A stretch of DNA of 64,000 nt, taken from positions 208,603 through 272,602 of IMG/VR virus record IMGVR_UViG_3300026484_000007; one strand, 5' to 3'. The position numbers were made by a program, and so were the translations under genes. This document shows, one piece after another, positions 6,306 through 58,732 of this stretch (positions within the stretch are counted from its first letter, which is position 1; the number at the start of each line of letters is the position of its first letter). The notes beneath the pieces are model-generated. The model was not told the DNA's origin. It did not search any database and was given only the letters and a program-made list of their open reading frames with translations.

Positions 6306-6491
6306 ATGTTACTTAAAGAATGTAATGGTTGCAAATATCTAGCTCGATTGATCGGTATAGGTCAAGGAGTTAGATGTACAAATCCAGAAAATCAAATAAC
6401 TGGAATGGATGGATCAAAAGCGATAGTTATATCTCAGATAGAGAATTGTAATTATTATAAGCAACATAAAAAAGATAAGAAAGAATCTTAA
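6306..6491 (+). CDS. small Cys4 (zinc-binding-like) protein
   Basis: AAAGGA RBS before the ATG at 6306; CNGC...C...C pattern. The track's start at 6180 overlaps nrdB and is unlikely. Confidence 0.6.
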   Translation: MLLKECNGCKYLARLIGIGQGVRCTNPENQITGMDGSKAIVISQIENCNYYKQHKKDKKES

Positions 6492-6512
6492 AAGGATCTT
6501 AAAAAGATCCAA

Positions 6513-6540
6513 TTGAAATATTTTTTTTGAAATTTAAGAT
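6513..6540 (+). promoter_or_regulatory. sigma70-like promoter for the large ncRNA
   Basis: TTGAAA-N16-TAAGAT ending about 9 nt before the first strand of the closing helix. Confidence 0.45.
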
Positions 6541-6672
6541 TTTCTTTAACTTTCTTTATCAGGCGATAAAAATCGAATAATCCCGCCTGACTGGAGCGAA
6601 ATACCAGTCACAAAATTATTTTACATGGGTTAAAATAAGGAGATCGCACTGAAGATGCGCTTTTATAATTAC

Positions 6673-6744
6673 ACCAAAAACGAAGGTTCGATTCCTTCCT
6701 TTCCCAACATAATAGGGAAAGTAGCCAAGAGGTAAGGCATTGGT
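6673..6744 (+). tRNA. circularly permuted tRNA-like domain (3' half precedes 5' half, no closed anticodon loop)
   Basis: ACCAA-aaac-GAAGG-TTCGATT-CCTTC-CTTTCCC-A, 8-nt linker, then GGGAAAG-TA-GCC-AAGAGGTAA-GGC-A-TTGGT. All four stems pair perfectly. Confidence 0.8.
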
Positions 6745-6775
6745 TCCAAAATATAAATATATAACAATCGAACGA

Positions 6776-6859
6776 AAAGTTCAAAGTAAAAAATTTAAAA
6801 TTTAATGCTTAAATACTAACTACTAAAAATTAACCTTCAAAATTTAAAATAAAAAGCTT
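6776..6859 (+). repeat. 12 consecutive degenerate 7-nt units, each starting AA
   Basis: aaagttc aaagtaa aaaattt aaaattt aatgctt aaatact aactact aaaaatt aaccttc aaaattt aaaataa aaagctt. Confidence 0.7.
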
Positions 6860-6938
6860 TTTAAAATCTTGGAGGAAGTTTTAAGTGGCGAGGATTAGCC
6901 CGATTTTTGATCCAAGCTGCTTGATAGAGAAAGACTTC

Positions 6939-6976
6939 AAAACCCTCGCATAGTGCGAGGGTTTTTTTGTCGTTAG
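6939..6976 (+). terminator. intrinsic terminator with GTCGTTAG tail
   Basis: AAAACCCTCGCA-TAG-TGCGAGGGTTTTTTT. Confidence 0.9.
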
Positions 6977-7015
6977 AAAAAATTAGATAAAATTAGAAAA
7001 ATAAAAAAATTTTGT

Positions 7016-7110
7016 AAATAAAATCTATGGGGAGCAATGCTCCCCATAGGGGGACTTTGTCCCCCTTGGAGGAGTGGAGACTTTTCGTCTCCACTCCTCT
7101 CTTTCTGCTA
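7016..7110 (-). ncRNA. GC-rich triple-hairpin cassette 1 (putative small RNA; strand uncertain)
   Basis: Hairpins CTATGGGGAGC/GCTCCCCATAG, GGGGGAC/GTCCCCC and GAGGAGTGGAGAC/GTCTCCACTCCTC. Leftward promoter-like motif at 7116-7145. On the - strand the last hairpin is followed by ATTTTATTT. Confidence 0.5.
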
Positions 7111-7115
7111 TTTAT

Positions 7116-7145
7116 ATATCAATTAAAACTAAAGCAGTTCTAAAA
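7116..7145 (-). promoter_or_regulatory. bipartite motif TTTTAGAACT-N14-(A/T)GATAT (putative phage promoter)
   Basis: Same motif and spacing at 7334-7363, 7966-7995 and 8695-8724, the last directly upstream of the only - strand gene. Confidence 0.55.
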
Positions 7146-7166
7146 AATCTCCGTAAATAAAATTAC

Positions 7167-7328
7167 AAATAAAATCTATGGGGAGCATTGCTCCCCATAG
7201 GGGGACTTTGTCCCCCACTCACTGGGGTGGTTGCCCACATTGGCAACGGGAGCAATCCCGCTCATTTGAGCGGGGCCCGACCACCCCGGAGGACTCACCT
7301 CCTTTCTTGGAGTCCTCCTTTTTTGCTA
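7167..7328 (-). ncRNA. GC-rich multi-hairpin cassette 2 with SD/anti-SD loop (putative small RNA; strand uncertain)
   Basis: Shares the two terminal hairpins with cassettes 1 and 3. Extra multibranch domain at 7224-7287. Hairpin 7288-7318 has loop ACCTCCTTTCTTG. Confidence 0.55.
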
Positions 7329-7778: not shown

Positions 7779-7826
7779 AAAACTCCGGAGTTCTAAAATA
7801 GAGCTCTGGAGTTTTTTTGTCGTTAG
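7779..7826 (+). terminator. intrinsic terminator with GTCGTTAG tail
   Basis: AAAACTCCGGAGTTCT...AGAGCTCTGGAGTTTTTTT. Confidence 0.7.
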
Positions 7827-7865
7827 AAAAAATTAGAAAAAATTAGAAAAAATAAAAAAATTTGC

Positions 7866-7960
7866 AAATAAAATCTATGGGGAGCAATGCTCCCCATAGG
7901 GGGACTTTGTCCCCCTTGGAGGAGTGGGGAATTTTCATCTCCACTCCTCTCTTTCTGCTA
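7866..7960 (-). ncRNA. GC-rich triple-hairpin cassette 3 (near copy of cassette 1)
   Basis: Part of a ~185-bp direct repeat (6961-7145 vs 7811-7995). Confidence 0.5.
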
Positions 7961-7965
7961 TTTAT

Positions 7966-7995
7966 ATATCTAATAAAACTAAAGTAGTTCTAAAA
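7966..7995 (-). promoter_or_regulatory. TTTTAGAACT-N14-AGATAT motif
   Basis: Copy of the bipartite motif. Confidence 0.55.
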
Positions 7996-8042
7996 ATAAT
8001 TAAAAATTAATGCGAAAAAAAGAGACAGAAGCGTCAGTAGGC

Positions 8043-8694: not shown

Positions 8695-8724
8695 ATATCT
8701 CATAAGCCTTTACCAGTTCTAAAA
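8695..8724 (-). promoter_or_regulatory. TTTTAGAACT-N14-AGATAT motif upstream of the - strand gene
   Basis: - strand reads TTTTAGAACT ggtaaaggcttatg AGATAT ctaaaaTAGCAAAAAAATCAAAGGAG...ATG. Confidence 0.6.
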
Positions 8725-8824: not shown

Positions 8825-10273
8825 ATGGGTTTTGATTTACTCGATATAAATAAATTTATTAAAGAAAAGGATGCTAAAGAAGTAACATCCGAAAAAACAT
8901 TTTTATTTACAAAAGGCGATTTTATTCCAGATCCAAATGGTTTATATAGTCCACAGATCTTCGAAGGAACTGGTATTAAAGGACAACGGGATAAATACGG
9001 ATACATATCTTTAAAAAATACAATTATGCATCCATTAATTTATAAGAATCTAAAAAAGATTGCTACAATTTTTTATTATGTAGCAACTTCTGAAAAACAC
9101 GTTGAAATTATTGATGGTGAACTTATAGAAACACCACCAGAAAACGGTGGTAAAACTGGATTAGACTTTCTAATAAATAATTGGAAAAAAATTAATTTAG
9201 ATAAATACAAGAAAGAAACGAATGAATTCTTTATTGAGTTTCTAAAGAAAGTTCAAGAAAAATTAATTTTTATTAATAAACTTCCAGTTATTCCAGTACT
9301 TTATCGACCTTATACTTTTGAACACGGACGAGTAATTGAAGATGAAATTACTGAAAAGTATAAAAAAATTTTATTAGAATACAAAAAAACTATGGGAGGT
9401 CTTTCCGGTCAGCCTTTGAATTCGTTGAATTCTAAAAATTTAACTGCGTCTGAAGATGCAGTTAGTTTAACTGGAAGAAGATCTACTATATCTAACATTG
9501 ATAACCCATTAGGTATTTCTGATGATAATGGATTAGAATTATTAAATTCATTTATTCAGAATAATGTAAATTCTTCAGAAAAAGTTCAAAAATACGTTCA
9601 GGATCTATATGATTATTTTATTTCTAAATTAGAGAAAAAAGAAGGTTTCTTTAGAAGTAATTTAGTAGGTAAAAGATTAGATAATGTATCAAGATTAGTT
9701 GCTAATGCTCGTCCAGATATACCAGTAGATTGCGTAGGTATTCCTTGGCATGTATTAATTAATATTTTTGATTATTACGTATTAGCTGAGTTAGAGCATA
9801 ATAAAGATGTCGCTGAAAAACTTGGTCTTGCTGACATTAGTACAGTAGACTTTGGAAAACACATCTATTATATCTATAAAAACTGTGATATTTATTGCAA
9901 GTCGTTTCCTGAAAGACAACAGATATGGATAGAATTACTTACAGAAATCTTTGATAAACATGATTATCTTAGAGTAGTATTTAAACGGGATCCAGGTTGG
10001 TCAGCGAATTCATTCTGGTCAGTAAAACCATTAATCTTAAAAGGATGTTCGTATTACATTGTTGTAAATTCATTTTATTACAAACCACTTGGTGGAGATA
10101 GTTTTAATACTAATATTCTAATTAAAGAATCTACTCAAAAATCTATTACTAAAGATTTAATTTTATCAAAGGATCCAAAAAAGATCCAAAAAAGATATAC
10201 GTTAGAATTTCCAGTAGCTAATGAAGCAAAAACATTAAAAAATTATTACGAAAAAAATAAAAAGGAGAAATAA
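8825..10273 (+). CDS. DNA-directed RNA polymerase beta' subunit, N-terminal fragment
   Basis: GLYSPQIF, YGYISL, LPVIPVLYRP, KKEGFFRSNLVGKRLD, VVFKRDP. Ends at PLGGD (NADFDGD position) followed by an unrelated 57-aa tail. Confidence 0.88.
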   Translation: MGFDLLDINKFIKEKDAKEVTSEKTFLFTKGDFIPDPNGLYSPQIFEGTGIKGQRDKYGYISLKNTIMHPLIYKNLKKIATIFYYVATSEKHVEIIDGELIETPPENGGKTGLDFLINNWKKINLDKYKKETNEFFIEFLKKVQEKLIFINKLPVIPVLYRPYTFEHGRVIEDEITEKYKKILLEYKKTMGGLSGQPLNSLNSKNLTASEDAVSLTGRRSTISNIDNPLGISDDNGLELLNSFIQNNVNSSEKVQKYVQDLYDYFISKLEKKEGFFRSNLVGKRLDNVSRLVANARPDIPVDCVGIPWHVLINIFDYYVLAELEHNKDVAEKLGLADISTVDFGKHIYYIYKNCDIYCKSFPERQQIWIELLTEIFDKHDYLRVVFKRDPGWSANSFWSVKPLILKGCSYYIVVNSFYYKPLGGDSFNTNILIKESTQKSITKDLILSKDPKKIQKRYTLEFPVANEAKTLKNYYEKNKKEK

Positions 10274-14746: not shown

Positions 14747-15154
14747 ATGGCTAATAAAAATTATACAGTTGGCCTTGATAAAAAATATTTAGATCTAGTT
14801 GACGCAGATCTAACTCCAGAAAATCAAAGATTTTTAAATGATTACGTTGCTAAAAAATTAAGAATGATAGATAACACTATCATCGCAAATCATCTTAAAA
14901 AAATGGATCAAGAAGCTTCTCATTATAAAAATCTTGATAACTTTGAAAAACAAGAGATAATTAATTCCGAAAGATGGAAAAATCCATTGATCGGTGCAAC
15001 TATTGGAGGAGCTCTTGGTTTTGGACTTACTGATGTAATCAGTGGAAATCCTACGACCGATGGAATATTTGGCGCTCTTGGGTTAGGAGTTGGAGCTTAT
15101 CAAGGTAAGAAATATACTGATTTTAAATTAAAAAGGCAAGGATTGATAAAATGA
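14747..15154 (+). CDS. glycine-zipper membrane-type protein
   Basis: GATIGGALGFG and GALGLGVGAY. Confidence 0.65.
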   Translation: MANKNYTVGLDKKYLDLVDADLTPENQRFLNDYVAKKLRMIDNTIIANHLKKMDQEASHYKNLDNFEKQEIINSERWKNPLIGATIGGALGFGLTDVISGNPTTDGIFGALGLGVGAYQGKKYTDFKLKRQGLIK

Positions 15155-15894
15155 AACGAAGAAATTATTTTAATTATTTAAAAGGATCTGCAAAAGATCT
15201 TTTAGAAGAAAATGATCGTTATCGAGCGTTCTATCCCACTTCCACTGCCGCTGCCGCTCCACAAAGATCAATTTGGTCGGATATGAAAAACGGCGCAAAA
15301 AATCTTGGGAATAGCATAGTAAATTCTGCTAGTAAATTTGGATCTAAAATAACTAATGACCCAAAAATTGCTGCAGCTACAGGAGCAGCGATAGGTGGAG
15401 CTCTTCATCTTTACGATGTTCATGATGCAAAATCTGATTTATCTGATCTTATGGGCAAAAATTTTGATGCAGAAAAAATTAATAAAGATACATTCAATAG
15501 CAATTATGAGCAATACAAAGATCTTTATAATAAAGAAGGTATTAATAAATTTGATGCGAATAACGATGGATACTTAGATAAAAACGAACTTCATAAACTT
15601 TATAATACATATAAAAATGATACAAGTTGGTTCCCGTGGTGGAATGATGCAGATGATAAAATCAGTGCGGCTAAAGAATATTATGATTATATTCAAAAAA
15701 CTCCAGCAATGGATTTTAATAAAGATGGAATTGTAGATTCTAATGACACTAAAGCAATGAAAGATGTTGATCGTGTCGTTAATAGTAGTTTACCTGCGAA
15801 CTTAATGGGTGGTGCTGCAATTGGAGGAGCTCTTGGATATGGAACTAATAAACTTAATTCAAAACTTAATTCAAAATTTGGAGGACATTCATGA
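15151..15894 (+). CDS. glycine-zipper protein with two EF-hand-like loops
   Basis: GAAIGG at both ends; DANNDGYLDKNE and DFNKDGIVDSND. Confidence 0.65.
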   Translation: MKRRNYFNYLKGSAKDLLEENDRYRAFYPTSTAAAAPQRSIWSDMKNGAKNLGNSIVNSASKFGSKITNDPKIAAATGAAIGGALHLYDVHDAKSDLSDLMGKNFDAEKINKDTFNSNYEQYKDLYNKEGINKFDANNDGYLDKNELHKLYNTYKNDTSWFPWWNDADDKISAAKEYYDYIQKTPAMDFNKDGIVDSNDTKAMKDVDRVVNSSLPANLMGGAAIGGALGYGTNKLNSKLNSKFGGHS

Positions 15895-16658
15895 AAAATA
15901 TAAAAAAGACAAGAACGCTTAATTATTTAAATGAGGCATCTAATAGAGATCTTTCAATTGCTTTAACTGGATTAGGTTTTGGAATTGGTGGAGCCGCTCT
16001 TGGCGACTCAATATATGATGCTCACTTAGATCATTATAATTCCGAATTCCAAAAACAATTTTCCGATATTAATGCCACCAAAGATCAATTATTGAATGAA
16101 AAATTTGGTGATCCTGAAAATAATAAAGAAGCTCTTCAATCATATCAAGATCAATACAATAAAATAAAATTTGCTGATTTTAATAAAGATGGTTTCGTTG
16201 ATGAACGAGAATACAACAAAGCACTTGAAAATTATAAAAATTATATTAACAGCGGAGGTAATAATCCATTCTCTGATAATTATAAAAATTTAGATTATAA
16301 ACCAGATACAGTAAAACAATTAAATACTTATAAAAATTTATTACATGATAAAGATTTTGTATCTAAATTCGATGTAAATCAAGATGGAACATTTAACGCA
16401 AGAGAATTACAGTTATTGAAAAAACTTCCAGAGTATCAAGACAGAATGAATTCTTTTGAATATCAACCATATTTATATGGAACTGCTGGAGCAATAGCGG
16501 GAATGAAATTAATGGATGCTGCGACTAGAGGCGAAAGTTCTGATAAAGATCGAATAAATTTTCCAAGTAATAGATTTGCTCCGTTTGGTGCTCCAAAAAG
16601 ACCAAACGAATCTCAAGAAATCGTAGATAAAGTTCCACTACCACCGATAGTAAAATAA
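15891..16658 (+). CDS. glycine-zipper protein with two EF-hand-like loops
   Basis: GLGFGIGGAALG; DFNKDGFVDERE and DVNQDGTFNARE; C-terminal GTAGAIAG. Confidence 0.65.
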   Translation: MKNIKKTRTLNYLNEASNRDLSIALTGLGFGIGGAALGDSIYDAHLDHYNSEFQKQFSDINATKDQLLNEKFGDPENNKEALQSYQDQYNKIKFADFNKDGFVDEREYNKALENYKNYINSGGNNPFSDNYKNLDYKPDTVKQLNTYKNLLHDKDFVSKFDVNQDGTFNARELQLLKKLPEYQDRMNSFEYQPYLYGTAGAIAGMKLMDAATRGESSDKDRINFPSNRFAPFGAPKRPNESQEIVDKVPLPPIVK

Positions 16659-50509: not shown

Positions 50510-50916
50510 ATTCAGAACTTATCTTATACAAGTATCTTATTACAGATAAAATACGATCTTTAAAAGATCTTTTTAATCTTAATCCAGATGAAAAATTAAT
50601 TTATGCAATAGATAATTTATTAGAGAGCGCTATTCTTTTTGAATCTTTAAATGATTCAAAACTAGAAAAAATTTCAGAAGAATTATTTAATCTTCATGAA
50701 AGATTATATTCGGAAATAGAAAATATAGTTCATAAAAAATTCCAAAATGAATTATTAAATGAAAAAATTATTAAAGAAAAGCAAGAGTACTACGAAGAGA
50801 TCTTAAAAAGATCACAAACTGATTTAGACAAAAAAGAATATGAAGATATCGAATCTCTCGAATTTCAATTGAAAAAGGATATAAGAAAGGATACAAGAAA
50901 GGATACTAAAAAATGA
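50506..50916 (+). CDS. hypothetical helical protein
   Basis: Translationally coupled to both neighbours. Confidence 0.7.
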   Translation: MNSELILYKYLITDKIRSLKDLFNLNPDEKLIYAIDNLLESAILFESLNDSKLEKISEELFNLHERLYSEIENIVHKKFQNELLNEKIIKEKQEYYEEILKRSQTDLDKKEYEDIESLEFQLKKDIRKDTRKDTKK

Positions 50917-52100
50917 AAGAAGCATCAAAAAATACAATAGAAAACACGGTAGTGATCGATTTAATTACTAATAAAGATTGCAATATGAATTGCAAGTATT
51001 GCTTTGAGCAAGGACATTTTAAGAATACTCAGCTAACCGAAGAAACAATAAATAATATTTTTAATTATATTAAATTATTAAAAGAAAAAGATCCTTCGGT
51101 AAATTTTGAATTTATTTTAATTGGTGGAGAACCGAGCATCGCAAAAAATTTAAATTTATTTTTAGAAAAATTGAAAACCTTAGACGAAAAGGATCTAAAA
51201 AAGATCACTTATATGACAAATGGATTATCAAAAGAAAAAATTGAAAATCATTTAAATCAAATAAATAATCTAATTGATCCTAAAAAGATCGAACTTCAAA
51301 TTTCTTATGATGGAAAAGGTTTTCATGATAAAAATAGATTATTTAAACAACAAGGGAATTTAATTCCTACAAGTGCTATTATAAAAGAGAATATCGATTA
51401 TTTTTATAATTCTGGTAAATGTTATGTTACTATAAAAAGTACAATAACTTATCAAGATTTATTAGATAAAGGATCTTTATTAGATACATTAAACGATTTT
51501 GAAGAATTAAATGAAAAATACCATATATTATATTCCGTTTCAGAAGACAAAACATCGTTCGAAATTCCTGAGAATTTATTTAAAAATAATTTAAATAAAT
51601 TATTAGAATCGTTATTGATCTTAGAAAGATTCGAAAAAGATTTCTTTAAAAAGAAAGGATATTTTTTGACTAAATGGTTTAATGGTGCTAGTTATAGAGC
51701 AGATAATAAAACTTGTGGTATGGGAAATAAAATTATTAGTTTTTCTCCAACGGGAGATGCAATGGCTTGCCATGCAATTGAATACTACGACACTAATGAA
51801 TCTAAAAAAGATCTTTTATACGGAAATATCAATCAAGACTCTTTAGATAGCATTTATGAAAATTTTGAAAGAATTAAAAAAGAAATCAATAATAATAAAT
51901 ACAACCAATGCATAGATTGCAAAACTTTATATTGTAGCAAATGTCCAGCATACACTTTCGAATCTTTAAAAGATCTAAAAAAGATCTATACTGGATCTAA
52001 ATTAAATAATCAAAATTTATGCAACTTTTTTAATTTATTAAGCATAAATATTTATAGAGTTTATAAAGAATTAAATATTCTTGATAAGCTGAAAAAATAA
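50913..52100 (+). CDS. radical SAM/SPASM protein
   Basis: CNMNCKYC, IGGEP, TNG, ISYDG; CGMG...ACH...CIDC...CSKCP...C. Confidence 0.92.
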   Translation: MKEASKNTIENTVVIDLITNKDCNMNCKYCFEQGHFKNTQLTEETINNIFNYIKLLKEKDPSVNFEFILIGGEPSIAKNLNLFLEKLKTLDEKDLKKITYMTNGLSKEKIENHLNQINNLIDPKKIELQISYDGKGFHDKNRLFKQQGNLIPTSAIIKENIDYFYNSGKCYVTIKSTITYQDLLDKGSLLDTLNDFEELNEKYHILYSVSEDKTSFEIPENLFKNNLNKLLESLLILERFEKDFFKKKGYFLTKWFNGASYRADNKTCGMGNKIISFSPTGDAMACHAIEYYDTNESKKDLLYGNINQDSLDSIYENFERIKKEINNNKYNQCIDCKTLYCSKCPAYTFESLKDLKKIYTGSKLNNQNLCNFFNLLSINIYRVYKELNILDKLKK

Positions 52101-52112
52101 AAAGGAGAAATT

Positions 52113-52682
52113 ATGGCTAAGTGTACGTGCGAAGTGATTAGTGCGTGTTCTTCCACTTGGAACTCAAAGTATTGTAGTACAGTTTGTGCATGTAATGACG
52201 TTACATCTTGTTATGACGATTGTAGCGCTTATCTTTCGACATCTCAAGCTAGAGACGATTTTGATAGCACTAAAGAAGATGAGGTTAATACTGCTAGAGA
52301 TAATTTTAAAGGTAAAAAAGTAATTAAAATTTCCGATTTAAAAGCAATTCGAAAATATTTGAATGATATTGCTAAAAGTAAAAAAGATAGTTCTATCACA
52401 ATAGATGAATTAGATAAAAGTAAAGGAGATACCGTTGAAGCAGCTGACGCAGATGATCCAAGAAAAACTAGTTTAAAAATTGGCCTTTTATCTGGAGTAA
52501 ACGCTGCGAGCGCAACATATGATCTTGGAAATATGGGAGAAATTGAATCAGAAGACATCATTGATGGATCGCAATTAAAAACTATAGCCGAATCAATTGT
52601 TGATATAGCTTTATCATGCAGATGTGTTGGTTATTCAGCACAAACTTGTAATGATCAATGTGTTTGCGATTGTAATTATTAA
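52113..52682 (+). CDS. Cys-rich protein, candidate radical-SAM substrate / tail-tip component
   Basis: 8 Cys in the first 37 aa and 6 Cys in the last 21 aa (CVCDCNY end). Confidence 0.6.
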   Translation: MAKCTCEVISACSSTWNSKYCSTVCACNDVTSCYDDCSAYLSTSQARDDFDSTKEDEVNTARDNFKGKKVIKISDLKAIRKYLNDIAKSKKDSSITIDELDKSKGDTVEAADADDPRKTSLKIGLLSGVNAASATYDLGNMGEIESEDIIDGSQLKTIAESIVDIALSCRCVGYSAQTCNDQCVCDCNY

Positions 52683-52729
52683 AAAATTATTAAAATTATT
52701 AAATTTAAATTTATTAAAAAGGAGAAAAT

Positions 52730-53521
52730 ATGTATTATACTTATGTATTTATGAAAAAAGTTTCAGACAATTATTATCAACCGATATCAATAGATAGAGT
52801 TTTTCAAACAGTAGCACCATTCTTAAAATTAGATAATTTTGATTTAGCAGCAAGAATTGATGATCAAGCAATTCGATTAATAGAATATGCGTGGAAGAAT
52901 AAAGAATTTCCTTTAATAAAAGCAGATTATGGAGATATGGTTAGCGTCGACAAAATCATTGTTTTTTCAATGGAAGAATTCAGAAAAGAAATTCTCGCGA
53001 CTAGAAATCCTAATAAATTAAAAGGTAAAACAATTGAAGAGCTATTCGACGATGAAGATTTAAAAAATGAATATCTTTTTGAAAAAAGAAAAGAAGAAAT
53101 TCTTAAAGAGATTCTTAATCAATTCTTCCCAATGTTTAACGTTTGGGATTTAATGAATATGATTAAATATTTAGAATACTGGGGAATTTTATTTAATGAA
53201 GGAATTGTAATTTCTGAAAAAAATAAAGAAGACAAATTCATCGAAATCATTGAAAAAGACGATGATTATCTTTTAGAGATCCTTGAAAAATTCTTAGAAG
53301 CAAAAGAAAGATTTGATAAATTCAATAAAAGTTATTCAGTATATAATAATTTAATTCAAGAGATGGATGAAGTTATGTATTGGGATTTTGATACTTTCGA
53401 AGAAGCTATAGGCACTCTTGATAAAATAAGAAATACATATGTAGCACCAGAAAATTATACTTGGGATAGCGATCTTTATTTATTTAGAAAAATAAGAAAG
53501 GAATATCTTGATAAAAAATAA
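52730..53521 (+). CDS. hypothetical protein
   Basis: 263 aa, AAGGAG RBS. Confidence 0.75.
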   Translation: MYYTYVFMKKVSDNYYQPISIDRVFQTVAPFLKLDNFDLAARIDDQAIRLIEYAWKNKEFPLIKADYGDMVSVDKIIVFSMEEFRKEILATRNPNKLKGKTIEELFDDEDLKNEYLFEKRKEEILKEILNQFFPMFNVWDLMNMIKYLEYWGILFNEGIVISEKNKEDKFIEIIEKDDDYLLEILEKFLEAKERFDKFNKSYSVYNNLIQEMDEVMYWDFDTFEEAIGTLDKIRNTYVAPENYTWDSDLYLFRKIRKEYLDKK

Positions 53522-54377
53522 AAAGGATCGTAAGACTCATTATCATATAATCCTTTCGGATTATTGTGATCGAAGCTGTCCTTATTGTATAAATTCTTCG
53601 GATCAAAATGAGATCATATCAAAAGACGATTACGATTTAATTTTAAAAGAATTAAAAAAAGTTATTACAACAGATGATCTGCAAAAGATCGTTATCGAAT
53701 TTAATGGAGGGGAATTTACTTTAATAAAAAATATTGAATGGTATTTTGAAAGATTATCTTTTATTTTTCAAGATCTATCTAAAAGTGATCTAAAAAAGAT
53801 ACAAATAATACTTACTACGAATTTCATAGCAGAAAATATTATTTATAATAATATTTATGATCACTTGAGATCTTTTTTAGATCATGATCAAATATGGTTT
53901 TGGGTAAGCACGCACTATGATTATACTGAAGAAAATTATATTCAAAAATTAAAAGATTTTTTAAGTTATCATAAAATTAAAAATAATAAAATAAATTACT
54001 GGTTTAACACATTAACCGTTTCGAAAAAACATAATAAATACATTAATGATCTTAGAAAGATCGCAAAAGAAAAATTAAAAGAATTATTTGATTTTCATAA
54101 CATTATTTTTAGTACTTCCAATTTAATTCCAGTTTCTTCGCTGAAAAAGAATATATATTGGTATGACACCAAACCTAAATTATGCTCGGGAAATATTTAT
54201 TTAATTATGTATAAAGGAGTGAGCAATTATTGTAAAGAAGAATTTTTTTCTTTCAATGAGATCTTTAAAAGATACGAACAGGATAATCAAGGTAATCGAA
54301 GTATACTTTGTAAGAAATCCTGCACCGATCAAAAATTTGATGAAGAATTATTTAAGCCTAAATATTTAAAAAAATAA
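53508..54377 (+). CDS. radical SAM protein
   Basis: CDRSCPYC, NGGEF, TTN. Confidence 0.85.
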   Translation: MIKNKKDRKTHYHIILSDYCDRSCPYCINSSDQNEIISKDDYDLILKELKKVITTDDLQKIVIEFNGGEFTLIKNIEWYFERLSFIFQDLSKSDLKKIQIILTTNFIAENIIYNNIYDHLRSFLDHDQIWFWVSTHYDYTEENYIQKLKDFLSYHKIKNNKINYWFNTLTVSKKHNKYINDLRKIAKEKLKELFDFHNIIFSTSNLIPVSSLKKNIYWYDTKPKLCSGNIYLIMYKGVSNYCKEEFFSFNEIFKRYEQDNQGNRSILCKKSCTDQKFDEELFKPKYLKK

Positions 54378-54423
54378 TTAAAATAATTAAAATAATAAAA
54401 ATAATAAAAAGCAAGGGAAATTA

Positions 54424-55191
54424 ATGCAATATGTATATTATAGACTCGACCCTAAATATTTACAAGAAAAATATAAATTAGAAAGTACTCTTCAAGATTT
54501 TTTTTATGGATATCAAACGTTTATAAATCCAGAAAAGAAATACATAATTAAAAACATTCCTCCATTAATCAATCAAGATAAAGACGGCTATTTTTATTTT
54601 TGGAATAAATTTTTATCGTTATTTTCATATGCTAGCGATCATCATCGATTTACTTCGCAAGATATATATATTGATCACGATGTTTTTTTATTTAATTTGC
54701 CTTCCAAAGATACCGAGAATTCCAATAATTTTTATTATACTTATGGGATTTATAATAGCACTAATAAAGTTAGTGCAGCTTGTTTTTCTTTAAAAAAATT
54801 TGAAGATTTTAAATATTATTTTAAAGTTTTTTTTAGTTGTAATGATTATATTAGAAAGAAGCCAGAAAAATTCGAAGAATTTTTATTAACAGAGTGGATA
54901 AAATCATTCATGTCCGACAAAAATTCTGAAAAATTAAAGAAAAAAATCATAAAGTTTTCAGAAAATAAGATAACGTTAGAAAAGCAAAAAACCTTTAAAA
55001 ATTTTATACTACATTATCAGACAAATTTTTTATATCAATTTATTATAAAAAATAAAGATAGTATTAAAATATTTTTAAAAGAAAAATTTTATATTAAAAC
55101 ATTACATGATCTTTTAAAGATCCTTAAAGATCTTGAAAAGATTTATAAGGATTTAAAAAATGAAAAAATATCAAAAAGTTATTTTTTATAA
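54424..55191 (+). CDS. DxD-motif (GT-A-like) protein, paralog of 56135-56761
   Basis: RLDPKY..KY and YIDHD shared with the paralog. Confidence 0.45.
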   Translation: MQYVYYRLDPKYLQEKYKLESTLQDFFYGYQTFINPEKKYIIKNIPPLINQDKDGYFYFWNKFLSLFSYASDHHRFTSQDIYIDHDVFLFNLPSKDTENSNNFYYTYGIYNSTNKVSAACFSLKKFEDFKYYFKVFFSCNDYIRKKPEKFEEFLLTEWIKSFMSDKNSEKLKKKIIKFSENKITLEKQKTFKNFILHYQTNFLYQFIIKNKDSIKIFLKEKFYIKTLHDLLKILKDLEKIYKDLKNEKISKSYFL

Positions 55192-55945
55192 ATTAAATTT
55201 TTTCAATGGTAATCTTTTTTACGCATTTGAATATTTTGAATATCTACGAAAAAATAATTGGAAATTAATAATAGATTTAAATGGATCTTTAAAAGATCCA
55301 TTTAAACTTCCAATAAATAAAAAAATTTTATTTGAAGCGTTTCGAGAAAAATACAGTAAAAAATATCATAATTTATTTACTGAAATTATTTTCTTGAAAC
55401 CTTCAACTTTTTTTGTCGCCGATAAAATCCTTGTATTAGATCAAACCAGCATAAAATATTTAAATAAAACATTCGTGTCTAAAAAGATTATTTATAATTA
55501 TGGAGACGATGAGCGATCTTTAAAAGATCCTTTGAATAATAAAAATAATAAAAATAATAAAAATATTATTACGATAGGAGATAAAGATATCGGTTGTAAA
55601 ATTCAATATCATTATCCATTAAAATTAAATTTTAAAATCTTAAAACGTTTAAATTATAAAAGGATCCAAAAAAGATCCTTTTTGGAAAATAAAACAAAAA
55701 ACATCTATGAAAGAAAAAGAAATGTTAAAGATTTTCATTATACTTTCGATACTTTAATTTATAAAAAAGAAAATTTCTGGGAAAGAGCAAATCGATTAAT
55801 TCCAGAATGTAAATTTTATAATAAAGAAATAATATTTGAAAATAAAGATAAAAGAATTGATAGCGCAAATCTTCGCTATCAATCGTCGTGGAAAGATTAT
55901 AGTTTATATCATAGTGATTTTAAAGATTTCGTGGAAAATCTTTGA
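55160..55945 (+). CDS. glycosyltransferase-like (GT-B?) protein, paralog of 59644-60579
   Basis: GNLFYAFEY, AFREKY and RLIPECKFYNKEI shared with the paralog. Confidence 0.4.
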   Translation: MKKYQKVIFYKLNFFNGNLFYAFEYFEYLRKNNWKLIIDLNGSLKDPFKLPINKKILFEAFREKYSKKYHNLFTEIIFLKPSTFFVADKILVLDQTSIKYLNKTFVSKKIIYNYGDDERSLKDPLNNKNNKNNKNIITIGDKDIGCKIQYHYPLKLNFKILKRLNYKRIQKRSFLENKTKNIYERKRNVKDFHYTFDTLIYKKENFWERANRLIPECKFYNKEIIFENKDKRIDSANLRYQSSWKDYSLYHSDFKDFVENL

Positions 55946-56075
55946 TTTTTAAAGTAGCATCTATTTTCGATACAAGCGATATAAAAGCAGTTCTAAAAAA
56001 TTTAGAACTGCTTTAGAACTCGTATATATCTTTGGGTATCTAATGAAGCGCAACGTTTTAGGATCACGAGTTTTC
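55934..56075. repeat. ~140-bp dispersed palindromic element, copy G (inverted)
   Basis: Reverse complement reads GAAAACTCGTGATCCTAAAACGTTGCGCTTC...GATGCTAC. Confidence 0.85.
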
Positions 56076-56134
56076 AAAGGAAAAAATGAAAGTATAAATA
56101 AATTTATAAATAAATCAAAGTCAAGGAATTATTT

Positions 56135-56761
56135 ATGGACGATTTAAAATTTATTAGAATAGATCCAAAATATATGGAGGATAAATATAAATACGAAGAC
56201 GAAATAACTTATATTATTTTTAAAGATCTTTTTAATATAGAAATAAAATACATTGAACCGATTTATAAAAATTTTTATAAAGAAAGAAAATATATAGATA
56301 AAAAATGGGAAAAGATTTTGACACTGATACATTATTCTTTTTCAGATTCATCTAAAAAATATTATATAGATCATGATATAATTATTAACCCTCGTGTATT
56401 ATCAATGAATAAAATAAACGCGACTTTTGGAGCATATTGCAAGACAGGTAATAAGCTAATGGCTAGTTTTATAGATATGAAAATTATTCAAAATTATAAA
56501 AATATTTTATCTGAAAATATTTTTTTATTAAAAGATATAAATAATGAAGAAATATTATTTAAAGAAATTATTTCAAAATTTAATAAATTTAACAATGTAA
56601 ATTATTTCGATTTACCATTTAATACTATAGAAAATTTAACTTTTCAAATGCATTATAATATTAATTTTATACAACCTTTAATTATAAAAAATAAAAAAAT
56701 AAAAAATAAAAAATATTTAATAAATTTGACAAAAAAACTTAGGAGAATTTATGAAAAATAA
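56135..56761 (+). CDS. DxD-motif protein, paralog of 54424-55191
   Basis: RIDPKYMEDKY, YIDHD. Confidence 0.45.
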   Translation: MDDLKFIRIDPKYMEDKYKYEDEITYIIFKDLFNIEIKYIEPIYKNFYKERKYIDKKWEKILTLIHYSFSDSSKKYYIDHDIIINPRVLSMNKINATFGAYCKTGNKLMASFIDMKIIQNYKNILSENIFLLKDINNEEILFKEIISKFNKFNNVNYFDLPFNTIENLTFQMHYNINFIQPLIIKNKKIKNKKYLINLTKKLRRIYEK

Positions 56762-57845
56762 AAATGATAGATTAAATAAATTTAATAAATTTAATAAATT
56801 TAATAAATTTAATAAATTTAACTCTATAGAAGATCTTTATAATAACTCATGTTTAAAATATGATCATTCGATAATAGATATCAAAAATGAATTTATTAAA
56901 TTAAATAAAATTTTAAAATTAAATGATGAGAGAATTAAAATTGATACGGGATTTGCTTGTAATGCTAAATGTTATTTTTGCTATTATCGATCTCATTTAA
57001 AAGATCCATTTCTTGAATTATCAGAAATTAAAAAACAGATCTTTCATGCAAAACAAATGAATTTTAAACAGGTGGAATTTAGTGGAGGAGAAAGTACTTA
57101 TCATCCTAAATGGTTTGATATGCTTGAAATTGCTCAAAAGTTAAATTTAAAATCCAGTTTGGTTTCAAATGGATTATTATTATCAAACTATGATTTTATT
57201 AAAAAAAGTTATAATTTAGGACTTAAAGAAGTTTTATTTAGTGTTCATGGTTATAAAGAAAATCATGATAAAATGATTGGGGTTGAAGGAGCGTTCGAGA
57301 AGATAATCCAAGCTATAAAATATTCTAAAGAACTGGGTATTCTACCAAGGATAAATATAACAGTCAATCTCATGAATATCAAAGTAATTCCTAATATAGT
57401 AAATTATTTATTGAATATAGGAGTGTATCAATTTAATTTTATAGAAATAAATAATTCTCATGAAGCTTTTAAAACAGCAAGAAAACAGCATTCGGAAATA
57501 TATAATTCTTTTAAAGAGCTTGAACCGATTTTTGATAAAATAATTGAAACTTATAAAAGAGATGATTGTTTAAATATTAGATATTTACCGTATTGTAAAA
57601 TCAATGAAAAGTATCATAAATACATGAAAAATTATATCCATCACTGGTTCGATCATTTTGATTGGAATCCATTGTTTGTGCATAGAACCGATTTTACCAC
57701 GGATAAAATTAAAACTTGGAAAAAAAGAGATTTATCTGTTTTCATAAAACAATTAAAAGCAACAAGAGATTATTGGTATTATAAAGATGAAGATTGCGAA
57801 AGTTGTAAATTTAATGGAGTATGCGATGGATATAAAAAACAATAA
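56751..57845 (+). CDS. radical SAM protein
   Basis: CNAKCYFC, FSGGE, SNG, SVHG; C-terminal CESC...CDG; N-terminal NKF repeats. Confidence 0.92.
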   Translation: MKNKNDRLNKFNKFNKFNKFNKFNSIEDLYNNSCLKYDHSIIDIKNEFIKLNKILKLNDERIKIDTGFACNAKCYFCYYRSHLKDPFLELSEIKKQIFHAKQMNFKQVEFSGGESTYHPKWFDMLEIAQKLNLKSSLVSNGLLLSNYDFIKKSYNLGLKEVLFSVHGYKENHDKMIGVEGAFEKIIQAIKYSKELGILPRINITVNLMNIKVIPNIVNYLLNIGVYQFNFIEINNSHEAFKTARKQHSEIYNSFKELEPIFDKIIETYKRDDCLNIRYLPYCKINEKYHKYMKNYIHHWFDHFDWNPLFVHRTDFTTDKIKTWKKRDLSVFIKQLKATRDYWYYKDEDCESCKFNGVCDGYKKQ

Positions 57846-57865
57846 AAAATTTAAGGATTAATTTT

Positions 57866-58732
57866 ATGCGAAATACAGATGAAATACAAAATTTTTATTT
57901 AAAATCAATGGCTCAGACTCCACTTTACAATACATTATATTTAAATACAGTTTTTACTAAAAAATGCAATTTTAATTGCAGTTATTGTTTCCAAGATAAA
58001 ACAGATGAAATTCTCGATTTGAACGTATTTGAAAATATTTTAAAAAAATTATTAAAATTTAAAAATATTGATAAATATATTTTTTCCATAATGGGAGGGG
58101 AATTATCTTTATTAGATGCTAAGTATATAAATAATATTTTTAATATATTTAATAAAGAATTTAAAGAATTAAAAAAATTAAAAAAAGATATCAAAATAGT
58201 CTTCGTTACTAATTTTTCTACGGATTTTAAAAATATTTATGAATTATATTTTTCAAAAGATTTTCTTAGTAAAAACGTTTTATTAGATTTAGCTATATCT
58301 CATCATCATCAAAATGAAAATCAATTATTCAATAAAGCAATAAATGATTTTATTGATCATAAATTATTGCTTCAAGAAAATATATTATTTACTATCAAGA
58401 CATTTAATATTAATTCATACGAAAAATTTATCAATTTAAAAAACGAATTCTTTAAAAAACATAAAAAATATCAAAATGATTTTTTAATCGAATTCGGTGA
58501 TAAAAATTGGAAAATTCAAAAAAGAATTTTTGCAAAAATAAAAAAATTTACAAGACCAGTAATATGTAATTCTTGGAATTATAATTTAGATTCAAATGGA
58601 AAATTATATCATTTATGTAATTTAAAAGAAATCGATATAAATGAAATAAAACAGATCCCTATTTTTTGCAATAAAAGGTGTAGCAATTATGAAATCGAAC
58701 AAGACACTTATAAAAGACATATACAAAAATAA
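57866..58732 (+). CDS. radical SAM protein
   Basis: CNFNCSYC, MGGELS, TNFS. Confidence 0.88.
   Translation: MRNTDEIQNFYLKSMAQTPLYNTLYLNTVFTKKCNFNCSYCFQDKTDEILDLNVFENILKKLLKFKNIDKYIFSIMGGELSLLDAKYINNIFNIFNKEFKELKKLKKDIKIVFVTNFSTDFKNIYELYFSKDFLSKNVLLDLAISHHHQNENQLFNKAINDFIDHKLLLQENILFTIKTFNINSYEKFINLKNEFFKKHKKYQNDFLIEFGDKNWKIQKRIFAKIKKFTRPVICNSWNYNLDSNGKLYHLCNLKEIDINEIKQIPIFCNKRCSNYEIEQDTYKRHIQK

What the first reader, a model, noticed from the sequence alone, without database searches (positions are those of the whole stretch)
6550..6933. Undescribed ~385-nt ornate RNA with long-range helices and a pseudoknot
Seen: an ORF-free unit between a sigma70-like promoter (6513-6540) and a strong terminator (6939-6968). 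The ends pair over 16 bp, CTTTCTTTATCAGGCG with TGCTTGATAGAGAAAG, using G-U pairs that only work on the + strand. AAAAATCG-aa-TAATCC-CGCC (6568-6587) pairs with GGCG-a-GGATTA-gcc-CGATTTTT (6887-6908). CTTGGA (6868-6873) with TCCAAG (6911-6916) crosses that helix, forming a pseudoknot. An alternative local hairpin TCAGGCG/CGCCTGA (6559-6590) competes with both long-range helices, suggesting a co-transcriptional switch. I cannot assign it to tmRNA, RNase P, a group I/II intron, GOLLD or ROOL by eye.
Basis: seen in the sequence. Interest (0 to 1): 0.9.

Follow-up and report, generated by a model that had tools for sequence, protein, structure and literature searches.

The report
Phage RNA with rearranged tRNA-like core
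A giant uncultured phage encodes a roughly 390-base non-coding RNA whose centre is a tRNA look-alike with its parts in rearranged order, held on a long double-stranded stalk; this is the design of bacterial Y RNAs (YrlA), here in an unusually large, so far unique version.

Summary
The two outer arms pair at -40.7 kcal/mol against -14.9 +/- 3.2 for shuffles, and their pair probabilities are 0.98-1.0. A strong terminator follows.

Positions 6673-6744 form a circularly permuted tRNA-like cloverleaf: closing stem, 4-nt variable loop, T arm, 7-bp acceptor stem closed by a loop, then D arm.

A covariance model built only from 13 such modules in other phages scores this one at 67.3 bits (E 2.5e-20). 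Across 19 modules, 16 of 20 pairs covary.

The order T arm, closed acceptor, D arm is the YrlA (bacterial Y RNA) design. In other phages these modules lie beside a DUF2828/DUF7788 gene, and I show that its product has the Ro60 fold.

The window RNA is not a YrlA member:
- Rfam YrlA gives 22.7 bits against a cut-off of 69.
- The GNCGAA motif is absent.
- No Ro60-like gene lies in the 64 kb.

It is not a tmRNA either: it has G3-C70 and ARAGORN finds nothing. The ~310-nt scaffold has no homolog anywhere I searched. The pseudoknot and the switch are unsupported.

Verdict: a new, oversized variant of a known kind (a tRNA-mimic scaffold RNA). Its partner and function are inferred, not shown.

The parts
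6513..6540 (+). Possible sigma-70-like promoter (TTGAAA, 16-nt spacer, TAAGAT). Weak; the true 5' end is unknown.
   Evidence: 9 of 12 matches, and such sites are as frequent in shuffles. The phage encodes its own multisubunit RNA polymerase, so another promoter type is possible.
6550..6587 (+). 5' arm of the long terminal stalk: 6550-64, 6565-67, 6568-75, 6578-83 and 6584-87.
   Evidence: it pairs with 6887-6933 at -40.7 kcal/mol (z = -8 against shuffles). Pair probabilities are 0.98-1.0 for the main helices and 0.72 for the 3-bp 6565-67/6910-12. No comparative support, because no homolog exists.
6588..6610 (+). Hairpin UGACUGG / CCAGUCA at the top of the stalk.
   Evidence: probability 0.97.
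6640..6664 (+). Small hairpin (CGCA/UGCG core) in the 5' linker 6611-6672.
   Evidence: core probability 0.92. Thermodynamic prediction only.
6673..6744 (+). Circularly permuted tRNA-like domain. Closing (anticodon-stem-like) helix 6673-77/6740-44; variable loop AAAC 6678-81; T arm 6682-98 with loop UUCGAUU; 7-bp acceptor hairpin 6699-6705/6715-21 with discriminator A6706 and loop AACAUAAUA; U8 A9 at 6722-23; D arm 6724-38 with G18 G19.
   Evidence: 67.3 bits, E 2.5e-20, with model R1 built from 13 modules of other phages; 16 of 20 pairs covary across 19 modules. Rfam YrlA aligns T, AS and D in this order at 22.7 bits. Read directly from the sequence: U8, A14, G15 with C48, G18 G19, G53-C61 and the T-loop UUCGAUU are in place.
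6745..6821 (+). A/U-rich 3' linker, mostly unpaired in the prediction.
   Evidence: Its short reading frames do not resemble tmRNA tags.
6822..6886 (+). Long A/U-rich hairpin (6822-24/6884-86, 6826-31/6877-82, 6834-40/6869-75, 6843-49/6859-65).
   Evidence: probabilities 0.71-0.98. Prediction only.
6887..6933 (+). 3' arm of the terminal stalk.
6939..6968 (+). Intrinsic terminator: 12-bp stem with 6 G-C pairs, then a T run.

Best explanation
This is a stand-alone non-coding RNA gene of an uncultured 272.6-kb jumbo phage. The transcript is about 385-420 nt and runs from near 6550 to the terminator at 6965.

Its functional core is a tRNA mimic at 6673-6744. In three dimensions this would be an L-shaped tRNA body made of T arm, acceptor stem and D arm, with the strands connected in permuted order. 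The acceptor stem is closed by a 9-nt loop. The 'anticodon stem' opens into the rest of the RNA instead of ending in an anticodon loop. The domain sits, with two linkers, on a stalk of about 36 bp formed by the 5' and 3' ends.

This is the YrlA/Y RNA design. By inference it works the same way. The stalk and linkers bind a partner protein, either a Ro60-like ring encoded elsewhere in the phage or host, or another protein. The tRNA-like domain is recognised by tRNA-handling proteins: modification enzymes, RNase P, the CCA-adding enzyme, and possibly host tRNA-targeting nucleases or RNA-repair enzymes. The RNA would then act as an adaptor or decoy in RNA quality control or repair during infection.

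Shown: the fold elements, membership of the core in a recurring covarying phage module, and the link of that module to Ro60-like genes in other phages. Inferred: expression, the partner and the function of this particular RNA.
For: 1. Anatomy. The permuted cloverleaf has every canonical tRNA tertiary nucleotide. The T arm and acceptor have probability 0.98-0.99.

2. Independent model. R1 was built without the window, from 13 modules of other phages. It scores the window at 67.3 bits, inside the 60-83 bit range of true modules and above tandem tRNAs, which reach at most 58 bits.

3. Covariation. Across 19 modules 93% of cells pair, 16 of 20 pairs change on both sides, 0 of 500 shuffles reach this, and slid controls pair at 31-51%.

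4. Closest Rfam family. YrlA is the best Rfam match by bit score on the core and aligns T, AS and D in the same order. YrlA gives sub-threshold hits (27-38 bits) to sister modules.

5. Literature. [quoted passage not shown]

6. Ro60-like neighbours. Sister modules lie on the same strand within about 5 kb of DUF2828/DUF7788 genes in L028, L132, L054 and L077, and in 10 of 80 further loci that share conserved flanks. That protein models with pLDDT 89, and its best PDB matches are Ro60 (1yvr, 9nep_A; E 1e-6; TM 0.61-0.67 over the full length).

7. Jumbo phages with ROT/TROVE proteins and tRNA-like partners are on record (PMC7824862).

8. The terminal stalk is far beyond chance, and a terminator follows.
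Against: - No Ro60-like gene lies in the 64-kb window (jackhmmer; hhalign best probability 2%; Pfam on about 50 ORFs). The other 208 kb of the contig could not be read.
- The flanks lack the GNCGAAN0-1G motif of YrlA. They also lack the AGGAUnnUUCAGCAA / AAAAAGUnnAUCCUG flanks of the Ro60-like-associated phage modules.
- The RNA is 3-4 times longer than YrlA or the sister units.
- The scaffold has no homolog, so none of it has comparative support.
- Other module subclasses sit in tRNA arrays with no Ro60-like gene in the fetched DNA, so the module is not tied to Ro60 alone.
- The closing stem (probability 0.09) and the D stem (0.23) are weak thermodynamically.
- Expression has not been shown.
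Confidence: 0.5

Rival explanations
1. Two-piece, aminoacylatable tRNA-like RNA that works like a permuted tmRNA. RNase P cuts before G6715 and the 3' side is trimmed to A6706, after which CCA is added. The two pieces, about 157 nt and 219-254 nt, stay paired. The charged RNA enters ribosomes, and the A/U-rich segment 6745-6821 may serve as a tag template.
For: - Gene order is that of permuted tmRNA genes: T arm and 3' acceptor strand first, then the 5' acceptor strand. The precursor ends pair, as in those genes.
- Partial Rfam hits cover 6680-6749: beta_tmRNA at 22.5 bits and tmRNA_permuted at 18.7 bits.
- The acceptor stem is a canonical 7 bp with discriminator A followed by ACA. M. smegmatis YrlA, which has a 7-bp stem, is cut by RNase P and receives CCA (PMC4201824).
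- 5 of 21 sister modules start the acceptor loop with NCCA.
- Phage two-piece tmRNAs are known (PMC9004378).
Against: - Position 3:70 is G-C, not the G.U that AlaRS needs.
- ARAGORN, which detects permuted tmRNAs, finds nothing in the window.
- The Rfam scores are far below the cut-offs of 84 and 47, and they cover only the T arm and acceptor.
- The domain has a full tRNA-type D arm, which tmRNA lacks.
- No frame in 6745-6890 ends in a hydrophobic tag of the ...LAA type. The best candidate ends ...KFNA.
- No pseudoknots are supported.
Confidence: 0.1
2. A tRNA decoy that acts without a Ro60-like partner. The anticodon-less tRNA body binds and blocks a host tRNA-targeting defence nuclease or a tRNA-modifying enzyme. 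Lacking an anticodon loop, it cannot itself be inactivated.
For: - The tRNA body is complete but has no anticodon loop.
- No Ro60-like gene was found in the window.
- Many sister modules sit inside phage tRNA arrays, which are commonly read as a counter to tRNA depletion.
Against: - Nothing explains the roughly 310 nt of scaffold.
- No nuclease-related or anti-defence gene was recognised next to the RNA.
- The idea is purely inferential and overlaps the best explanation in mechanism.
Confidence: 0.15
3. Evolutionary debris: a remnant of two adjacent tRNA genes (3' half of one, 5' half of the next) in an intergenic region whose flanks happen to pair. No function.
For: - Tandem tRNAs mimic the T-to-D order and score up to 58 bits with R1.
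- The RNA is a singleton with no homolog.
- The 21 bases of T arm plus 3' acceptor strand are identical to ordinary phage tRNAs.
Against: - The two acceptor strands pair 7 of 7 and the closing stem 5 of 5, which two unrelated tRNA halves would not do.
- The outer arms pair at z = -8.
- A terminator sits right after the 3' arm.
- ARAGORN finds no tRNA gene anywhere in the 64 kb that could have been the source.
- The same architecture recurs with covariation in many phages.
Confidence: 0.08
4. A permuted tRNA gene that is completed by RNA processing, either as permuted intron-exon group I splicing or by cleavage and ligation through a circular intermediate, to yield a normal tRNA.
For: - The 3' half precedes the 5' half, as in the permuted tRNA genes of some algae.
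- The same module occurs in giant-virus contigs L026, L044 and L103, which carry an NCLDV capsid gene.
- The flanks total about 305 nt, the size of a small group I intron.
Against: - The bases next to the closing stem (U-C-C-A-A... on one side...U-U-A-C on the other) cannot be joined into a normal 7-nt anticodon loop with U33.
- No group I or II intron signal appears even at E up to 10, although a permuted intron could escape that model.
- The A/U-rich flanks show no P3-P8-like core in the predicted fold.
Confidence: 0.03

Closest known systems
YrlA (Rfam RF02553), the bacterial and phage Y RNA with a tRNA-like domain that partners Ro60/Rsr (Chen et al. 2014, PMC4201824)
   Same: - A terminal stem formed by the 5' and 3' ends.
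- A closing helix that encloses T arm, closed acceptor-like stem-loop and D arm in that order.
- tRNA tertiary nucleotides kept.
- A 7-bp acceptor stem, as in M. smegmatis YrlA.
- It is the best-scoring Rfam model on the core.
   Different: - 22.7 bits against a cut-off of 69.
- No GNCGAAN0-1G motif.
- No Ro60 gene within 4 kb or anywhere in the 64 kb.
- About 385 nt against about 110 nt.
- 61-nt and 142-nt linkers with extra hairpins between the stalk and the tRNA-like domain.
Phage permuted tRNA-like modules next to DUF2828/DUF7788 (Ro60-fold) genes. Not curated in Rfam; defined here by model R1.
   Same: The core domain is a clear member: 67.3 bits, with the same closing stem, 4-5-nt variable loop, T arm, 7-bp acceptor hairpin and D arm.
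   Different: - Those units are about 110-130 nt and often tandem.
- They carry the conserved flanks AGGAUnnUUCAGCAA ... AAAAAGUnnAUCCUG and sit in tRNA arrays beside the Ro60-like gene.
- The window RNA has none of these flanks, no tRNA genes nearby and a unique large scaffold.
Two-piece (circularly permuted) tmRNA: Rfam RF01850, RF04321 and the alpha/cyano families. Phage examples in PMC9004378.
   Same: - Permuted order of T arm, 3' acceptor strand and 5' acceptor strand.
- Paired precursor ends.
- Similar overall length.
   Different: - G3-C70 instead of G3.U70.
- A full D arm.
- No tag frame and no supported pseudoknots.
- ARAGORN is negative, and Rfam scores are 16-22 bits against cut-offs of 47-84.
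Large ornate phage-associated RNAs (GOLLD RF02032, ROOL)
   Same: A phage-borne, large, structured non-coding RNA. GOLLD also lies beside tRNA arrays; for example L037 carries both GOLLD and permuted modules.
   Different: No match at any threshold. It is much smaller and has a different architecture.

Membership tests
YrlA (RF02553) | Reaches the Rfam gathering score of 69 bits | tested here: not met
   No hit in the whole-window scan. 22.7 bits over the full-length model when only 6650-6770 is searched.
YrlA (RF02553) | tRNA-like domain in the order (V) T arm, closed acceptor-like stem-loop, D arm, enclosed by a helix that leads to the terminal stem | tested here: met
   Sequence reading, RNAfold and the YrlA alignment.
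YrlA (RF02553) | GNCGAAN0-1G motif near the 5' end, the putative Ro60 contact (PMC4201824) | tested here: not met
   A regex over 6540-6975 finds no match, only NNCGAANN near-matches.
YrlA (RF02553) | Encoded within 4 kb of a Ro60/TROVE gene, on the same strand | tested here: not met
   The neighbours are RNR subunits, small ORFs and RNA polymerase subunits. No Ro60-like ORF lies in the 64 kb.
YrlA (RF02553) | Bound by Ro60; tRNA-type modifications (TruB, DusA) | not testable with these tools
   Needs immunoprecipitation and modification mapping.
   67.3 bits, E 2.5e-20. True members score 60-83 bits.
   16 of 20 pairs change on both sides, 93% of cells pair, 0 of 500 shuffles reach this. The alignment was fitted to the model, so it leans towards the structure.
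This defines the Ro60-like-associated subclass. | tested here: not met
Two-piece (permuted) tmRNA | G3.U70 alanine identity pair in the acceptor stem | tested here: not met
   G6717 pairs with C6703, which is G3-C70.
Two-piece (permuted) tmRNA | Detected by ARAGORN or by the Rfam tmRNA models at threshold | tested here: not met
   ARAGORN finds 0 genes. beta_tmRNA gives 22.5 bits against 84, and tmRNA_permuted 18.7 against 47; both are partial matches.
Two-piece (permuted) tmRNA | Tag reading frame with a resume codon and a hydrophobic C-terminal tag, flanked by pseudoknots | tested here: not met
   The three frames of 6745-6890 give only short frames with no ...LAA-type end. The only candidate pseudoknot is 6 bp.
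Two-piece (permuted) tmRNA | Processing into two pieces, CCA end, aminoacylation, SmpB binding | not testable with these tools
   Needs Northern blot or RACE and charging assays.
Canonical tRNA | Colinear cloverleaf with an anticodon loop | tested here: not met
   ARAGORN and Rfam tRNA are negative. The order is permuted and there is no anticodon loop.
GOLLD / ROOL / other curated large RNAs | Match to the Rfam covariance model | tested here: not met
   No match at gathering score, and none at E up to 10 in 6400-7100.

The most novel reading that the evidence does not exclude
The RNA is cut by RNase P inside the acceptor loop, receives CCA and is charged with an amino acid other than alanine. 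That would make it a two-piece, phage-encoded tmRNA analogue, or another kind of aminoacyl carrier, that evolved from a tRNA independently of SsrA. The long stalk would hold the two pieces together, and the A/U-rich segment would act as a template or ribosome-binding part.
Probability: 0.06. Interest if true: 0.9.

Novelty: new variant of a known kind. Interest (0 to 1): 0.6.

Why it matters
Y RNAs with a tRNA-mimic domain are known from about 250 bacteria and a few phages, always as RNAs of about 110 nt beside a canonical Ro60 gene.

This finding and its relatives add three things.
- The permuted tRNA-like domain is a reusable building block. Phages mount it on several unrelated scaffolds.
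- A very common phage protein family of unknown function (DUF2828/DUF7788, more than 570 loci in IMG/VR) has the Ro60 fold and sits beside such RNAs inside tRNA arrays.
- At least one jumbo phage carries a version 3-4 times larger, with its own terminator and no visible Ro60-like gene nearby.

If the RNA is expressed, it gives a concrete handle on two questions: how jumbo phages manage RNA damage, repair or tRNA-targeting host defences, and what the tRNA-like domain of Y RNAs is for, which is still open.

Tried and rejected
Known families
- Rfam at gathering score over the whole window gave nothing.
- ARAGORN found no tRNA or tmRNA.
- GenBank phages by blastn gave only a 57-nt A/T-rich chance match.

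Search for homologs of the whole RNA
- The exact 21-mer of T arm plus acceptor hit only ordinary phage tRNAs in IMG/VR.
- Synteny through NrdB homologs (60-67% identity; L120-L123) and through RNA polymerase beta' homologs (52-62% identity; L124-L127, also L002 and L003) found no related RNA by nhmmer, blastn or T-loop scan.
- A metagenome-wide pattern scan returned the same contig plus sister modules only.
- The scaffold halves searched against all 220 fetched loci and against the window itself gave nothing.

Ro60-like partner
- A single-sequence AlphaFold model of the DUF2828 protein was useless (pLDDT 41).
- Sequence-profile searches of the PDB did not find Ro60. Only the model built from an alignment plus Foldseek did.
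- I could not read the rest of the 272-kb contig. The local repeat motifs occur only at 7-8 kb.

Other readings
- The small ORF 6655-6735 (26 aa, behind an AAGGAG) runs through the conserved tRNA-like domain. I judged it fortuitous.
- A relaxed module finder produced only noise.
- cmscan's alternative 5' acceptor strand GGUAAGG (6731-37) was rejected, because GGGAAAG gives a perfect 7-bp stem and fits model R1.

Full report
**Context.** The window is the last 64 kb of IMGVR_UViG_3300026484_000007, a 272,602-bp viral contig. It has about 27% G+C, and nearly all genes are on the + strand. It encodes ribonucleotide reductase subunits just upstream of the finding. It also encodes several split beta and beta' subunits of a multisubunit RNA polymerase, as phiKZ-like jumbo phages do, together with a T4-like portal and virion proteins. 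The closest cultured phages share at most 27% identity in the beta' fragment. It is therefore an uncultured, deeply branching jumbo phage.

**The observation.** The region 6550-6933 holds no + strand ORF of 30 aa or more.

- 6550-64/6919-33, which is 15 bp with two G.U pairs
- 6565-67/6910-12
- 6568-75/6901-08
- 6578-83/6892-97
- 6584-87/6887-90
- a hairpin at 6588-94/6604-10

Several measures place this beyond chance:
- The whole RNA folds at -98.2 kcal/mol, z = -6.4.
- The two outer arms alone pair at -40.7 kcal/mol, against -14.9 +/- 3.2 in 1000 dinucleotide shuffles.
- Their pair probabilities are 0.98-1.0.
- A strong intrinsic terminator follows at 6939-6965.

- The sigma-70-like promoter is at chance level in this A/T-rich DNA, and the phage has its own polymerase.
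- The proposed pseudoknot is 6 bp (-6.2 kcal/mol) and competes with a local helix of probability 0.98.
- The alternative hairpin has probability 0.0 in the full RNA.

The centre of the RNA, 6673-6744, is a tRNA cloverleaf with its strands in permuted order. Its parts, in sequence order, are:
- a 5-base strand, ACCAA
- a 4-nt variable loop, AAAC
- a T arm, GAAGG-UUCGAUU-CCUUC
- the 3' acceptor strand CUUUCCC, then discriminator A
- a loop
- the 5' acceptor strand GGGAAAG
- U8 and A9
- a D arm, GCC-AAGAGGUAA-GGC
- A26
- UUGGU, which pairs back to ACCAA

All the nucleotides that build the tRNA elbow are present: U8, A14, G15 with C48, G18 G19, G53-C61 and the T loop. There is no anticodon loop. 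The 'anticodon stem' opens into a 61-nt 5' linker and a 142-nt 3' linker, and these lead to the terminal stalk.

cmscan in E-value mode picked up part of this as weak partial matches to permuted tmRNA models. When only the core is searched, it gives a full-length but weak match to YrlA at 22.7 bits.

**Is the core a real, recurrent element?** I scanned IMG/VR for a T loop followed within 20-40 nt by this D arm. I then screened the matches for complementarity of the two acceptor strands. About 20 phage loci had the same permuted module with different stem sequences. One metagenome scan added more.

A covariance model (R1) was built from 13 modules of other phages, without the window. It scores the window at 67.3 bits, E 2.5e-20. 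True modules score 60-83 bits. Tandem tRNAs, the expected false positives, score at most about 58 bits.

On the 19-module alignment A2:
- 93% of cells form standard pairs.
- 16 of 20 pairs show changes on both sides.
- No shuffle of 500 reaches the observed values.
- Sliding the 3' partners drops pairing to 31-51%.

The alignment was fitted to the model, which favours the structure. Even so, the stems differ almost completely between loci.

**What kind of thing is the module?** Its topology is exactly that of YrlA: terminal stem, closing helix, then T arm, closed acceptor-like stem-loop and D arm. YrlA is the tRNA-mimicking Y RNA of bacteria and some phages. It is defined by this domain, a GNCGAAN0-1G motif and a Ro60 gene within 4 kb. 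Its domain is modified by TruB and DusA. In M. smegmatis, where the acceptor stem has 7 bp, it is cut by RNase P and given CCA (PMC4201824).

Rfam's YrlA model gives sub-threshold hits of 27-38 bits to many of the phage modules, but none reaches 69 bits. That holds even in loci chosen for the partner gene.

In L028, L132, L054 and L077 the modules lie on the same strand as a gene for a DUF2828+DUF7788 protein, within about 5 kb. More than 570 such genes exist in IMG/VR. Among 80 fetched loci, R1 hits were all on the gene's strand. Ten of them share conserved non-tRNA flanks, AGGAUnnUUCAGCAA ... AAAAAGUnnAUCCUG.

Sequence searches did not link this protein to any solved structure. An AlphaFold model from a 52-sequence alignment (pLDDT 89, pTM 0.88) has Ro60 as its two best PDB matches: 1yvr and 9nep_A, E about 1e-6, TM 0.61-0.67 over the full length. 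The vWA domains rank next. The protein also carries a DVSGSM MIDAS-type motif. The phage modules are therefore Y RNA-like partners of a Ro60-fold protein. They form an uncurated relative of YrlA.

Other module subclasses have different flanks and no Ro60-like gene in the DNA I could fetch. They include L037, L137 and L142 as one group; L056, L058, L136 and L138 as another; L085; and the L040 and L111 types, which keep an intact anticodon arm. The domain is thus a building block used on several scaffolds.

**Where the window RNA fits and where it does not.** Its core is a clear member of the module class. Its scaffold is not.
- It has neither the YrlA motif nor the Ro60-like-associated flanks.
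- It is 3-4 times longer than YrlA or the sister units.
- ARAGORN finds no tRNA gene anywhere in the 64 kb.
- No ORF in the window resembles the Ro60-like profile (jackhmmer; hhalign best probability 2%; Pfam and PHROGs).
- Relatives of the phage found through NrdB or the polymerase subunit lack the RNA in the fetched flanks.
- The scaffold halves match nothing in about 2 Mb of fetched phage DNA.

The stalk, linkers and 3' hairpin therefore rest on thermodynamics alone.

**Mechanism.** The best-supported reading is a Y RNA-like adaptor or decoy. The stalk and linkers would bind a partner protein. The tRNA-shaped domain would be recognised by tRNA-handling proteins. I give this 0.5, because the partner is unseen.

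The tmRNA-like rival gets 0.1. In its favour are the gene order, the 7-bp stem with A73, and the enrichment of NCCA at the start of the acceptor loop in sister modules (5 of 21). Against it are G3-C70, a full D arm, the lack of a tag frame, and negative ARAGORN and Rfam results.

The remaining rivals are a Ro60-independent decoy (0.15), tRNA-gene debris (0.08) and a permuted tRNA completed by splicing (0.03).

**Novelty and verdict.** This is not a member of any curated family. In design it is a new, oversized and so far unique variant of the YrlA-type tRNA-mimic RNAs. The side result may be of wider interest than the single RNA: DUF2828/DUF7788 proteins have the Ro60 fold and travel with permuted tRNA-like RNAs in phage tRNA arrays. 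Interest 0.6.

Noticed in passing
window 6961-7146, 7154-7320, 7811-7996: A 186-nt direct repeat (94% identity) and a longer third variant lie right after two terminators. Each holds an A/T-rich TTTGTAAATAAAATCTATG box, then three G+C-rich hairpins ending in a terminator-like stem. This stands out in a 27% G+C genome. Each is followed by a conserved AAACTAAAGCAGTTCTAAAAA box upstream of genes (7126, 7344, 7976; a diverged copy near 8705). They look like small-RNA or promoter cassettes. The motifs occur only here in the 64 kb.
   Followed up: partly
L028:2873-4285, L132:2700-4118 (-), L077:5747-7309 (-), L143-L222: The DUF2828+DUF7788 phage protein family (more than 570 loci in IMG/VR, thousands in metagenomes) is predicted to have the Ro60 (TROVE + vWA) fold. 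It sits inside tRNA arrays next to Y RNA-like units with the flanks AGGAUnnUUCAGCAA ... AAAAAGUnnAUCCUG. Some units carry the permuted tRNA-like domain and some only a simple hairpin. Rfam YrlA does not reach threshold on them.
   Followed up: partly
L098:11135-11261 (-), L128:481-660: A 'dumbbell': a permuted tRNA-like module is nested inside the anticodon stem of an ordinary-order tRNA-like cloverleaf. The two stems are separated by a 3x3-nt internal loop.
   Followed up: no
L026, L044, L103: The same permuted module, with 14-18-nt acceptor loops, occurs on contigs that encode an NCLDV-type major capsid protein, that is, giant viruses of eukaryotes. There it may be a true permuted tRNA gene like those of some green algae.
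   Followed up: no
L056:3130-3527 (-), L058:99-167, L136:569-958, L138:1247-1636: In gut-type phage contigs the modules sit in repeated units that start with GCGGCU...UCAUCCUUCUA. From memory, this box resembles the 3' end of 16S rRNA (an anti-Shine-Dalgarno-like sequence). The units end in ...AAAUUUCCGC.
   Followed up: no
L037:2762-3121 and 9181-9694; L137, L142: A phage tRNA array with three tandem permuted modules, several with an encoded ACCA after the 3' acceptor strand. It also holds tRNAs that Rfam spans over 130-200 nt, which suggests long inserts, and a GOLLD RNA at 156 bits.
   Followed up: no
L040:1508-1591 (-), L111:4227-4294 (-): Variants of the module keep an intact anticodon arm after the D arm (loops CUCUUAA and CGCAUAA). 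In these the permutation point lies in the variable region instead.
   Followed up: no
window 50913-58732: A cluster of at least four radical-SAM/SPASM-type genes lies where G+C falls from about 27% to about 20%. It is possibly a peptide- or nucleotide-modification cassette.
   Followed up: no
window 6306-6491: A 61-aa ORF with two Cys pairs (zinc-ribbon-like) ends 60 nt before the RNA gene. It has no family match. It could be unrelated or an RNA-binding partner.
   Followed up: partly
window 15151-16658: Two adjacent phage ORFs give EF-hand and dockerin-like calcium-binding motif hits, which is unusual for phage proteins.
   Followed up: no
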